A stretch of 64,000 nt of DNA. Source: Ostrea edulis (Eukaryota). The notes beneath the pieces were generated by a model, which was given only the letters and a program-made list of their open reading frames with translations, was not told the origin of the DNA and ran no database searches. The position numbers and the translations under genes are program-made. The stretch covers positions 37,014,001 through 37,078,000 of the forward strand of contig NC_079166.1 in the NCBI RefSeq assembly GCF_947568905.1. Direction: 5' to 3'. Below, in pieces: positions 50,941 to 62,747 of this stretch (position 1 is its first letter; the number at the start of each line of letters is the position of its first letter).

Positions 50941-53900
50941 TCATGTGTTATTCTGGGAATCGTCTGACAAGTGACCAAAGTTTCCATCAATAGCAGCAGC
51001 TTTGATTCGTCTAAGAAGCTCAACGAATGAAATCCTTTCACTCACTTTTATCTGGAAAAAGAATCCAACATGTTTACAATTCAAGTATGTCTCATTTTAC
51101 TAGACATTTCATCAAGTCCTTCAAAATATCAGACAGAAATATACATCTCTATACCCACTTAATACATCAAGTCCCTCAAAGTAATGCTCTGCAGATTATA
51201 GACTTTAAACTAGGTACAGTATAAAGGGAACTTTTAACATGCGGAACATTTAGCAGATTTTTCTGAAAACTGTGGTTTGAATTCATTGTGGTTTAGTTTC
51301 TGGTGCAGTGTCTTTTTATCAAGTGTACCTTTTCTATAAAATGATTTTGGCTCTTTTACAATTGACAAAAACTTCTTCATCCGGGAAAAAAAGCAAACAT
51401 TTCTAGTATGGTATTTGCAACAGAGACAATATGTGCCTCTTGTTATAATTTGAACACTTTTAAAAAACATTTAAAAACACATCTTTTTAGACTTGCGTAT
51501 CATTAGTATTATAGGTGGTTAAATCTTTATGGTTTCTTTACCATCAGTTTTAACATTACTTTTTCAAGTGTATATTTGTATATTTATTTCAACTATTGTA
51601 TTTTATATCATTTGATCGTACAGCATGGAACTTTCTTAATGCACAGCATGTTTTAAATTTTAGTAATTCAACTTCACATTATTGATGTTTTGCTAGCATT
51701 GTCTTAACTCATTCAGCCCCAGCTATGTTATCTGAGATAAGCCCCAGCAGTGTTTTGCAGCGAGTGCCCCAGGCAAATTTTTATCAGATTCCCTGCTGCT
51801 GCTGAATGATCAGCAGACAATAGATAAATAGCCACTACTTCATTAATTATGCACATATGTTTTTGAAATTTTCAGGTTAGAAAGAAGAATAAATGCTGAT
51901 TCTAATCATATAAAATTTATTATCTTACCATAAAAAGTGTTTGTTCATTTCCCAAAAGAAAACAAAAATAAACAGTTTTCACCAACAAAAATTTTCATAT
52001 GTCACTGTTTATTGTCCATAAATGTTTGGAAAGTTGTCCAAATGGTAGGGTCTGAAACAGTCATTACACAGGTTCACATCACATTGTGTACATCCACTTA
52101 AAGGTTCCCGTCTAACACCAGATTTAGTACATTGTTTACATCTCCTCTTCTTTGGCATCGTGCTTGGCCAGTGGTGTTCCATCGCCTGTGCTACATTAAA
52201 CTCAGGTTTGCGTTTCCTTTTAATTGAGAAATTCCCAATTAACTGATGCGCAAGCTTCATCCTAAATTCCATTTGGGTCCTGGTTCGAGTGCGGTTGTTT
52301 TTGGTCTTCAGACCATGATTTGGAGATTCGCGCATCAATATATATGCATTTACAATGCATACATCGTATAGGAAGAGGAACAGGTATTTCCACCACTTCA
52401 AACTTTTCCTGGCAATGTTATATGTGGACCTTAATTGATCAGCATGATCCACACCATTCATGTATGCATTATATAGCTTCACAGAGTTTGGGCAGGTCAC
52501 ATTCTTCACAGAACCATCCTTCTGCTTCCTCATGACTTCTTGGTTGCTCTGGTTCGTGTTTGTTGACAGGATGGTCAAATTTCTCTTGTCCCTCCAGACA
52601 CTCACTACAAGGTTTGCCTTTTGTCTCATGATATGATCACCTTGATTTTTCAGCTTGATTTTATCAAGATCCTTGGGCATTCCTTTCCTGTTTTGTTTCA
52701 CTGTTCCACAGGCAACAGTCCTCATGTCCCATAACTGTAGAAACAGATCTGGGGATGAGAAGAAGCTGTCGCAATATATATGATGACCTAAGTTCAAAAT
52801 AGATGTCATCAGATCTAAGACAACTCTTCCACCTAAGTTGGCCTCTGCGACATTGTTATTCTTTCCAGTGTACACTTGGAAATCATTCATGAATCCGTTG
52901 TGTGGATCAGCACGAACCCACACTTTTATCCCACGTTTAGTAGGCTTCAGTGGTACATACTGTTTGAAGCCAAGTCTCCCTGAAAAACCAATCATGGCTT
53001 CATCAATTGATACTTCTTTATGTGGATTATATTGGGCCTTGAAATTTTCTCGAATCCCTTCCATAATTGTTCTAACATGAACAAGTTTGTCATGTCCAGG
53101 CTGGTTCCTCGGTGGATTTTGTGTTGTGTTGGCAACATGGAAGTATCGTTGAATGTTTTCAAATCTGGTCCTTGTAAATCTCTCTTCAATACATGATAAA
53201 TGAAATAGTTTGTCTTTAGACCAGTACAAATCTTGTGCAGGTGCAGAAACAATACCCATAACAACTGAACAACCAAGAAATGCACGCATTTCCTCAGGAG
53301 TTGTGTTGTACCATCCAGAGTTTGCTTTTGATCTGATGCAGATTTGCGCATACGAGTTTGTTTCCTCGGAAATTGTCGTATAAAACTCGTCAGGAAATAA
53401 TAAATTCAGGAAGTCTAACTCCTTTTTATCGGCCTCAAGTATTTGTGTGGGTCCAGGCTGCGGTCCACAGAATGCAGGAATGTTTATATCCCGTATATTG
53501 TCTGTCCAACGATTGTAATCTGCCAATACAATCTCATCATCATCACTACTTTCACTTTCTGACTCGGGGTCGGATTCCGACTCAATATCAGACACTTCGA
53601 GGTCTGATCCTTTTTCTAAAGCATCATCCAAATTAAGTAGATGATAAATGTAGTTGTCTTCTGCATTTTCAACGTCTTTCAATTCAAATCCCTCAAATTC
53701 TTCGCTGCTATCGTCTTGTAAAATTTCTCGCAATACGTCCGCCATTTTCGATCGATATTTTAAACACATGTACCAAATTCCTTTGTGTATAGCTATTTAT
53801 ATCGTATCTAAATAAAGAACACTTCACACAAAGACATCTTAACATGTCATTCATTGGTTGGGATAATCATGTGTACCCGGATTTTTCTAGTTTCGACCAA

Positions 53901-62747: not shown

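What the first reader, a model, noticed from the sequence alone, without database searches (positions are those of the whole stretch)
50941..62747. Hidden 10-exon gene encoding a TAZ2-like zinc finger fused to a pseudokinase
Seen in sequence: ten canonical GT-AG exons splice in phase into one frame. The N-terminal part, ASRCKDKDCSLRRCQAMKAAL..QH...LYEHAKNCEEPPMRCTVPWCHLLRK, parallels CBP/p300 TAZ2 (HACQCRNANCSLPSCQKMKRVVQH...YHAKHCQENKCPVPFC). Zn site 3 is intact, site 1 lacks its His, and site 2 lacks its Cys residues. The kinase keeps the VAIK lysine (YVIK), part of the Gly loop and the catalytic-loop Asn, but HRD is YLY and DFG is NLT, so both essential aspartates are missing. Established: TAZ domains bind transcription-factor activation domains, and kinases lacking these aspartates are pseudokinases. 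Inference: this is a non-catalytic scaffold or regulator. I do not know of a characterised TAZ-pseudokinase fusion.
Basis: partly seen in the sequence, partly recalled or inferred. Interest (0 to 1): 0.8.

Follow-up and report, generated by a model that had tools for sequence, protein, structure and literature searches.

The report
Oyster TAZ-like pseudokinase gene
A real, conserved and transcribed oyster gene joins a degenerate copy of the zinc module that CBP/p300 uses to hold transcription factors to a catalytically dead kinase domain; I found no description of this pairing, and its function is untested.

Summary
The ten exons are real. All have GT-AG borders and read in one frame. Transcript contigs from a closely related species join five of them exactly at the predicted borders, including the TAZ-to-kinase junction.

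The gene is larger than reported. Two more coding exons lie beyond the window's end, giving 12 exons and 929 aa, so the TAZ-like domain sits in the middle (residues about 510-590), behind a 500-residue disordered region.

Orthologues exist in Saccostrea, Magallana/Crassostrea and, more diverged, Pinctada. All are annotated as uncharacterised or kinase-only.

TAZ2 homology is supported but divergent:
- A family profile hits only p300/CBP TAZ2 in the whole PDB (E 6e-4).
- hhalign gives 90.7% probability.
- zf-TAZ is the only Pfam hit, but below its cut-off.
- ESM Atlas neighbours are TAZ clusters.
- Two of three zinc sites survive.

The kinase domain passes Pfam. It has YLY for HRD, NLT for DFG and Val at the alphaC Glu position, and these changes are the same in all species compared.

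dN/dS is 0.05 (TAZ-like) and 0.09 (pseudokinase), so this is not a decaying pseudogene. A scaffold function is inferred only.

The scan earlier noted a TAZ2-like domain in a NIK-like kinase elsewhere in this genome. I could not locate that gene to test kinship.

The parts
62656..62747 (-). It holds the first half of the TAZ-like domain, including the C-x4-C-x4-C cluster of zinc site 1.
   Evidence: AG acceptor and GTAAGT donor. The X1 contig piece 62656-62748 is contiguous with the next exon. In frame with upstream exon 2.
62305..62468 (-). It holds the second half of the TAZ-like domain, with the lone site 2 His and the intact site 3 H-x3-C-x6-C-x4-C.
   Evidence: Single copy in the genome. 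81% identical to residues 605-658 of the Saccostrea cucullata protein.
59217..59337 (-). Coding exon 5: acidic linker between the TAZ-like domain and the pseudokinase.
   Evidence: The junction 62305->59337 is carried by X1 record 1 and X2 record 5. Conserved in orthologues.
58738..58905 (-). Coding exon 6: invariant HHH motif, degenerate Gly loop (G-x-x-G-x-V), an insert, and the beta3 Lys (YVIK).
57110..57248 (-). Coding exon 7: alphaC region (Val at the position of the alphaC Glu) and the HPNLI motif.
56766..56897 (-). Coding exon 8: alphaD-alphaE and the start of the catalytic loop, with YLY in place of HRD.
   Evidence: Pfam Pkinase E 3.7e-4 on this exon alone.. Single copy.
56089..56222 (-). 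Coding exon 9: catalytic-loop Asn kept, NLT in place of DFG, activation segment, PPE in place of APE.
54656..54787 (-). Coding exon 10: alphaF region (D-x-W-G).
   Evidence: Pfam Pkinase E 1.9e-3 on this exon alone..
54385..54471 (-). Coding exon 11: C-lobe.
50941..51051 (-). Coding exon 12: end of the C-lobe (subdomain XI Arg), short tail and stop codon.
   Evidence: The X1 contig has 594 nt beyond exon 7, against 596 nt expected for exons 8-12.
52012..53796 (-). Intact 594-aa piggyBac-type transposase ORF inside the last intron, on the same strand as the gene. It is an insertion, not part of the protein.
   Evidence: Pfam DDE_Tnp_1_7, E 1e-81. Three full-length copies at about 100% identity plus deletion derivatives in the genome.
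31497..31607 (-). Second copy of the terminal exon, with intact acceptor, one residue changed and the same stop. It lies inside an 88%-identical duplicated segment and could serve as an alternative last exon.
   Evidence: Its use was not tested.

Best explanation
This is the 3' ten exons of a single-copy, 12-exon gene of an oyster. The species is probably a flat oyster, inferred from the pattern of identities. The gene encodes a 929-aa protein with four parts: (1) about 500 residues of acidic, Ser-rich disordered sequence with short conserved motifs; (2) a divergent TAZ2-like domain that keeps two of the three zinc sites; (3) a conserved acidic linker with an HHH motif; (4) a C-terminal pseudokinase. 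Shown here: the exons, the splicing of exons 3-7, the orthologues, the TAZ2-like and kinase-fold similarity, the loss of catalytic residues in every species compared, and purifying selection. Inferred: the protein does not transfer phosphate and acts as a scaffold. In this reading the TAZ-like module docks short helical motifs of partner proteins or of its own disordered half, as TAZ domains do. The pseudokinase would then serve as a second binding or conformational-switch surface, as in other pseudokinase adaptors.
For: Gene and splicing: canonical sites and one frame, and spliced contigs in two runs of a relative about 3% diverged. Full-length 4.0-4.4 kb Crassostrea transcripts carry the same uninterrupted ORF. 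Orthologues of 995-1042 aa are colinear with the model, and the Pinctada locus holds every part. TAZ2-like: the family profile against all PDB sequences returns only p300/CBP TAZ2, best E 6e-4, over positions 10-84 of 91. hhalign against 20 natural TAZ2 sequences gives 90.7% probability, P 1.3e-6. zf-TAZ is the only Pfam family hit in 7 of 7 orthologue segments, E 5.5e-4 to 4.2e-3. The window's own spliced domain scores 19.2 bits against a TAZ2 HMM, with a maximum of 9.3 in 2000 shuffles, and pairwise Gumbel p is 2e-5. ESM Atlas feature neighbours and structure neighbours (TM 0.62-0.74) are TAZ clusters. Pseudokinase: Pkinase scores 85.8 bits. YLY, NLT/NLS and Val at the alphaC Glu position are invariant from oysters to Pinctada. 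Selection: dN/dS is 0.054 for the TAZ-like domain, 0.049 for the linker, 0.094 for the pseudokinase and 0.26 for the disordered half. Of the listed differences from the relative's transcript, 10 are synonymous and 4 are not.
Against: The Pfam zf-TAZ score stays below the gathering cut-off. My AlphaFold model of the domain (pLDDT 72, six-sequence alignment, no zinc) did not match TAZ2 in Foldseek or VIA-align, and the 421-residue model failed (pLDDT 44). The domain is near neutral (pI 7.8) whereas the genome's own CBP TAZ2 is strongly basic (pI 9.55), so it may not bind acidic activation domains. The Pinctada domain scores only 3.2 bits against the TAZ2 HMM. The RNA runs are labelled 'RNA?' by guess and come from a relative, not from the window's species. 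The last junction and the choice between the two terminal-exon copies are untested. No binding, zinc or nucleotide data exist, and some kinases lacking canonical residues are still active.
Confidence: 0.6

Rival explanations
1. The kinase-fold domain is an atypical active enzyme. It would carry out non-canonical phosphotransfer or another nucleotide-dependent reaction, with the TAZ-like domain recruiting substrates.
For: The beta3 Lys, two Gly-loop glycines and the catalytic-loop Asn are kept, and an Asn sits at the DFG Asp position. All are invariant. Constraint is strong, with dN/dS 0.09. From general knowledge, some kinases once called pseudokinases proved active.
Against: The HRD Asp, the catalytic-loop Lys, the DFG Asp and the alphaC Glu are all replaced together. 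No relocated catalytic residue is evident.
Confidence: 0.12
2. The Cys/His-rich segment is not homologous to TAZ. It would be a lineage-specific zinc or helical extension of the pseudokinase that resembles TAZ2 by convergence and has no peptide-docking role.
For: The Pfam score is sub-threshold. The AlphaFold model has no TAZ fold match. One zinc site is lost, another lacks its His, and the basic surface is absent. The Pinctada domain is barely TAZ2-like.
Against: Four different methods each pick TAZ2 and nothing else, in register over the whole domain.
Confidence: 0.12
3. The locus is a mis-joined model or a decaying pseudogene of an active kinase.
For: A transposon sits in the last intron and the terminal exon is duplicated. 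The catalytic motifs are lost.
Against: There are spliced contigs and full-length transcripts. The frame is open in five species. The same substitutions are fixed from oysters to Pinctada, and dN/dS is low.
Confidence: 0.03

Closest known systems
TAZ2 domain of CBP/p300 (Pfam zf-TAZ, PF02135)
   Same: The Cys/His ligands and helices are in the same register: C-x4-C-x4-C followed by the MK helix, a His at the end of helix 2, and the HAK-x-C...C-x-x-P-x-C site 3. It is the only family found by PDB profile search, hhalign, Pfam and Atlas.
   Different: The score is below the Pfam cut-off. Site 2 has lost its three Cys and site 1 its His. There is a two-residue insert in site 3. The charge is near neutral rather than strongly basic. 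The domain is split by a phase-0 intron and sits in a kinase-fold protein, not an acetyltransferase.
Plant BTB-TAZ (BT) proteins and the small TAZ-only proteins of nematodes
   Same: In both, a TAZ domain is used outside CBP/p300 as a docking module. BTB-TAZ and TAZ-only clusters are among the Atlas structure neighbours.
   Different: The partner domain is BTB or absent, not a kinase fold. The lineage differs, and no specific sequence kinship to them was shown here.
Scaffold pseudokinases such as Tribbles, STRAD-alpha and MLKL (compared from general knowledge)
   Same: A kinase fold with degraded catalytic motifs, kept under selection and used for binding or allostery.
   Different: There is no specific sequence kinship. 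The best PDB matches are scattered across MSK1, ITK, PKC, AKT and CaMK at about 23-25% identity. None of those pseudokinases carries a TAZ-like module.
TAZ2-like domain in a mollusc NIK-like kinase
   Same: The same genome has a TAZ2-like zinc domain ahead of a kinase-fold domain, unannotated and not described in the papers searched.
   Different: By that note, the other gene is an apparently active NIK-like kinase with the domain about 350 residues ahead of the kinase. Here the gap is about 60-90 residues and the kinase is dead. I could not find that gene with my profiles or a motif pattern, and exon searches found no paralogue, so kinship is untested.

Membership tests
zf-TAZ (PF02135), TAZ2 type | Pfam score at or above the gathering cut-off (25 bits) | tested here: not met
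   17.9-20.8 bits, E 5.5e-4 to 4.2e-3, in 7 of 7 orthologue segments. It was the only family reported. Single exons gave nothing.
zf-TAZ (PF02135), TAZ2 type | Significant profile similarity in register over the whole domain | tested here: met
   The PDB-wide profile search returned only p300/CBP TAZ2, best E 6e-4. hhalign gave 90.7% probability, P 1.3e-6, over 66 columns. The window's spliced domain scored 19.2 bits against at most 9.3 in 2000 shuffles.
zf-TAZ (PF02135), TAZ2 type | Three HCCC zinc sites | tested here: not met
   Site 3 is intact. Site 1 keeps three Cys, but its His is Ile/Phe in oysters and Asp in Pinctada. Site 2 keeps only its His.
zf-TAZ (PF02135), TAZ2 type | Four-helix TAZ fold | tested here: inconclusive
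   The Atlas model of residues 578-665 of the Saccostrea orthologue matches TAZ clusters at TM 0.62-0.74. My AlphaFold model (pLDDT 72) has four helices, but p300 TAZ2 is only a non-significant top Foldseek hit (E 2.3, TM 0.28), and VIA-align gives only generic helical matches.
zf-TAZ (PF02135), TAZ2 type | Zinc binding and binding of disordered helical motifs | not testable with these tools
   Needs purified protein.
Eukaryotic protein kinase fold (Pkinase, PF00069) | Pfam score above the cut-off (31.7 bits) | tested here: met
   85.8 bits for P0001 and 50.3 for the partial Pinctada protein. Atlas neighbours are all kinases.
Catalytically competent protein kinase | beta3 Lys, alphaC Glu, HRD Asp and DFG Asp all present | tested here: not met
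   The Lys is kept. Val/Ile sits at the alphaC Glu position, YLY replaces HRD, and NLT/NLS replaces DFG, in all species compared.
Pseudokinase (functional class) | Degraded catalytic motifs kept under purifying selection, rather than a pseudogene | tested here: met
   dN/dS is 0.094 over 265 codons between two Crassostrea transcripts. The motifs are identical in Pinctada.
Pseudokinase (functional class) | No phosphotransfer activity | not testable with these tools
   Needs an enzyme assay.
Mollusc TAZ-bearing NIK-like kinase (scan note s1-279208) | Detectable paralogy of the TAZ-like or kinase exons | tested here: inconclusive
   No second copy of exon 4 or exon 8 in the genome. Profiles A1 and A4 and a site 3 DNA pattern found only this gene and CBP. 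The other gene was not located, so no direct comparison was made.

The most novel reading that the evidence does not exclude
Molluscs have recruited TAZ2-like modules into kinase-fold signalling proteins at least twice, or once followed by divergence: this pseudokinase and the NIK-like kinase noted elsewhere in the genome. In this gene the module would work as a cytoplasmic mimic of CBP/p300, capturing activation-domain-like motifs of transcription factors. A dead kinase domain would gate that capture, giving a new way of coupling signalling to transcription-factor availability.
Probability: 0.15. Interest if true: 0.8.

Novelty: new variant of a known kind. Interest (0 to 1): 0.52.

Why it matters
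To my knowledge, in animals TAZ domains are known essentially from CBP/p300, where they are hubs for transcription-factor activation domains. A TAZ2-like module with two surviving zinc sites, fused to a pseudokinase and kept under strong constraint from oysters to pearl oysters, is a natural experiment. It shows how much of the TAZ scaffold is needed, and it gives a new pseudokinase architecture with a ready hypothesis for partner capture. It also shows that current annotation misses the domain, since orthologues are labelled uncharacterised or kinase-only. Together with the scan's TAZ-like NIK note, it hints at a molluscan theme worth a dedicated survey. The limits are a narrow taxonomic range and no functional data.

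Tried and rejected
- **Single-exon searches.** Pfam on single exons gave only weak Pkinase hits and no TAZ hit. phmmer of exon 4 alone against PDB found nothing.
- **PF02135 over the whole genome.** It found only the CBP locus. The sub-threshold hits L004-L006 are translated minisatellites, and I found no kinase exon in the 43 kb fetched around L004 (30 kb on one side, 10 kb on the other).
- **Spurious weak hits.** L008, L022 and L025-L027 are spurious. P0003 and P0004 from the representatives search are low-complexity repeats.
- **Structure prediction.** AlphaFold on the domain gave pLDDT 72, but no significant TAZ match in Foldseek or VIA-align. AlphaFold on residues 575-995 of P0001 failed at pLDDT 44, so nothing can be said about contacts between the TAZ-like domain and the kinase.
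- **Locating the NIK-like TAZ gene.** Profile A1, mixed profile A4 and a back-translated site 3 pattern all failed. The two extra pattern hits are out of frame.
- **Literature.** No paper was found for TAZ plus pseudokinase, zf-TAZ plus Pkinase, or LOC105326502.
- **Window protein in remote tools.** The spliced window protein has no reference, so I did not type it into remote tools. Pfam, PDB, Atlas and structure runs used the orthologues. The window's own protein was tested only in local scripts.
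Full report
**Observation**

They join in phase into an open frame of 423 codons counted from the Met at 62739.

One read-laying run over 57050-62800 tested the key junctions.
- In runs X1 and X2, single contigs lie on 57108-57248, 58738-58905, 59217-59335, 62303-62468 and 62656-62748. Consecutive record positions show nothing between the pieces. These runs are from 'organism A', labelled RNA by guess, and differ from the window by about 3% in the exons.
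- Intron bins away from repeats have zero depth in these runs.
- DNA runs of the window's own species (X3, X6) have contigs that cross the exon-intron borders.

The TAZ-like exons are therefore spliced to the kinase exons exactly as predicted, at least in a close relative.

**The gene is larger than reported**

The X1 contig continues for 1187 nt beyond 62748.

- One is a 995-aa Saccostrea cucullata protein, with the match at residues 605-658 (81% identity).
- The other is a partial Pinctada imbricata protein.

Mapping the orthologues onto the genome beyond the window's end found two more coding exons, at G000:C3:37085749-37086563 and 37079916-37080610. With canonical sites the model becomes 12 coding exons and 929 aa over 21.6 kb.

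62747 is thus the first base of internal exon 3, and the Met at 62739 is internal.

**Orthologues**
- S. cucullata LOC134228985.
- S. echinata LOC133185118.
- Magallana gigas A0A8W8J7G0.
- Many Logan transcript contigs from Crassostrea-type runs (clusters of 109 and 72 members). Two full-length contigs of 4.0-4.4 kb carry the uninterrupted ORF.
- The Pinctada locus holds every part of the architecture in the same exon pattern, although its annotation is partial.

The gene is single copy in this genome.

**The TAZ-like domain (window residues about 510-590)**

Single exons give no Pfam or PDB hit, because the domain is split by an intron. Whole domains from orthologues behave differently.
- zf-TAZ is the only Pfam family reported in 7 of 7 segments, at 17.9-20.8 bits, E 5.5e-4 to 4.2e-3. 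This is under the 25-bit cut-off.
- A six-row family profile searched against every PDB sequence returns 15 hits at E up to 10. All are p300 or CBP TAZ2. The best E is 6e-4, aligned over positions 10-84 of 91.
- hhalign against 20 natural, non-human TAZ2 sequences gives 90.7% probability and P 1.3e-6.
- In local scripts, the window's own spliced domain scores 78 against this genome's CBP TAZ2, against 31 +/- 6 for shuffles (Gumbel p 2e-5). It scores 19.2 bits against a TAZ2 HMM, against at most 9.3 bits in 2000 shuffles.
- ESM Atlas neighbours by language-model features are zf-TAZ clusters (0.87, 188 of 256 features shared). The seven nearest structure rows are all TAZ-bearing clusters at TM 0.62-0.74.

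The register shows the state of each zinc site.
- Site 3 (H-x3-C-x6-C-x4-C) is intact.
- Site 1 keeps C-x4-C-x4-C, but its His is Ile or Phe in oysters and Asp in Pinctada.
- Site 2 keeps only its His.

Against the assignment, my AlphaFold model did not superpose on TAZ2. It was built from six sequences without zinc and reached pLDDT 72. The domain is also near neutral (pI 7.8), unlike the basic CBP TAZ2 (pI 9.55).

I read it as a divergent TAZ2 homologue with two zinc sites, not a certified Pfam member.

**The kinase domain**

Pkinase scores 85.8 bits. The best solved relatives are scattered across MSK1, ITK, PKC, AKT, CaMK and WNK at about 23-25% identity, so no parent family can be named.

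Alignment with active kinases shows the following.
- Kept: the beta3 Lys, two of three Gly-loop glycines, the catalytic-loop Asn, the alphaF Asp-x-Trp-Gly and the subdomain XI Arg.
- Replaced: YLY for HRD, Ser for the catalytic-loop Lys, NLT (NLS in Pinctada) for DFG, PPE for APE, and Val or Ile at the alphaC Glu position.

Every one of these states is the same in the window, Saccostrea, Crassostrea and Pinctada.

**Selection**

Between two Crassostrea transcripts (dS about 0.2), dN/dS by region is as follows.

| Region | dN/dS |
|---|---|
| TAZ-like domain | 0.054 |
| Linker | 0.049 |
| Pseudokinase | 0.094 |
| Disordered N-terminal half | 0.26 |

Of the 14 listed differences between the relative's contig and the window in exons 3-7, 10 are synonymous.

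The N-terminal half is acidic (pI 4.9) and 14% Ser. It carries short blocks that are nearly identical (at least six of every eight residues) across oysters, several also visible in Pinctada. Examples are the ELF-x-NG, RSKSDS-x-LP, KRSVSFQ, RRKEYR-x-SSGYGTG, LSLMYEGDK, LP-x-LSIM and STGHSSYG...NPEIF-x-F motifs.

This is a maintained gene, not a decaying copy.

**Mechanism**

Shown:
- A transcribed, conserved protein with a TAZ2-like module, a conserved linker and a kinase fold lacking four catalytic residues.

Inferred:
- No phosphotransfer takes place.
- The TAZ-like module docks short helical motifs, possibly the protein's own conserved N-terminal motifs or those of partners.
- The pseudokinase offers a second binding or switch surface.

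I give this scaffold reading about 0.6. I give about 0.12 each to an atypical active enzyme and to a convergent non-TAZ zinc segment. A mis-joined or dying gene is very unlikely.

**Comparison and novelty**

The closest known module is CBP/p300 TAZ2. TAZ domains outside acetyltransferases are known in plant BTB-TAZ proteins and in small nematode proteins.

I found no paper on a TAZ domain joined to a kinase or pseudokinase.

I could not locate it with two profiles and a motif pattern, and exon-level searches show no paralogue of this gene. Whether the two share an origin is open.

The gene itself is already in databases for other oysters, as uncharacterised or kinase-only. The new element is the architecture, not the locus.

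**Context**

- The last intron holds an intact piggyBac-type transposase ORF with three identical copies genome-wide.
- The terminal exon and its downstream flank (the presumed 3' UTR) are duplicated 19 kb downstream at 88% identity. Which copy ends the mRNA is untested.

**Limits**

- RNA evidence comes from contigs of a related species, in runs only guessed to be RNA.
- The spliced window protein could be analysed only in local scripts.
- Both long structure predictions were of low confidence.

Noticed in passing
window 52012-53796 (-): An intact 594-aa piggyBac-type transposase ORF (DDE_Tnp_1_7, E 1e-81) lies in the gene's last intron. The genome has three full-length copies at about 100% identity, one at 96%, and several internally deleted derivatives that keep the first 574 and last 37 bases. 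This looks like a recently active element.
   Followed up: partly
window 28810-31909 and 49001-51403: A segmental duplication at 88% identity carries a second, intact copy of the gene's terminal exon (31607-31497, one residue changed) together with its downstream flank (the presumed 3' UTR). A 62-nt unit present once at 49575-49641 is expanded to 8 copies at 29703-30201.
   Followed up: partly
window 36794-39437: A minisatellite of 126 copies of a 21-nt unit explains the strong GC and AT skew of this stretch.
   Followed up: no
window 60698-61081 and 62042-62425: Intronic repeats have summed depths from about 6,000 to over 100,000 in the two RNA-guessed runs and from about 19,000 to 5.9 million in the DNA runs. 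Loose ends at 62109 read a tRNA-like GGTTCGAATCC tail, which suggests a SINE-type element.
   Followed up: no
window 59362-60083, 60452-61450, 61483-62028, 63551-64000: The introns between the TAZ-like and kinase exons, and upstream of exon 3, are packed with minisatellites with units of 31, 44, 28 and 24-109 nt.
   Followed up: no
Crassostrea proteins P0013, P0016, P0027 (365-380 aa) and P0007 (668 aa): Many transcript contigs, and the NCBI record XP_011424873.1, encode only the exon-1 product. Reading through the first donor gives an immediate stop, as it does in the window. A 668-aa form starts in an alternative first exon ahead of exon 2. Isoforms with only the N-terminal part, or lacking it, may therefore exist.
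   Followed up: partly
L015 (Pinctada imbricata VSWD01000010.1), 7337-15853: The annotated protein KAK3089424.1 is partial and wrongly joined at its 3' end. The locus contains the disordered exons, both TAZ-like exons and the missing kinase exons.
   Followed up: partly
L004 (G000:C1:65928386-65928559) and L005/L006 (G000:C10): Sub-threshold zf-TAZ hits in the genome-wide search are translations of tandem repeats, not TAZ domains.
   Followed up: yes
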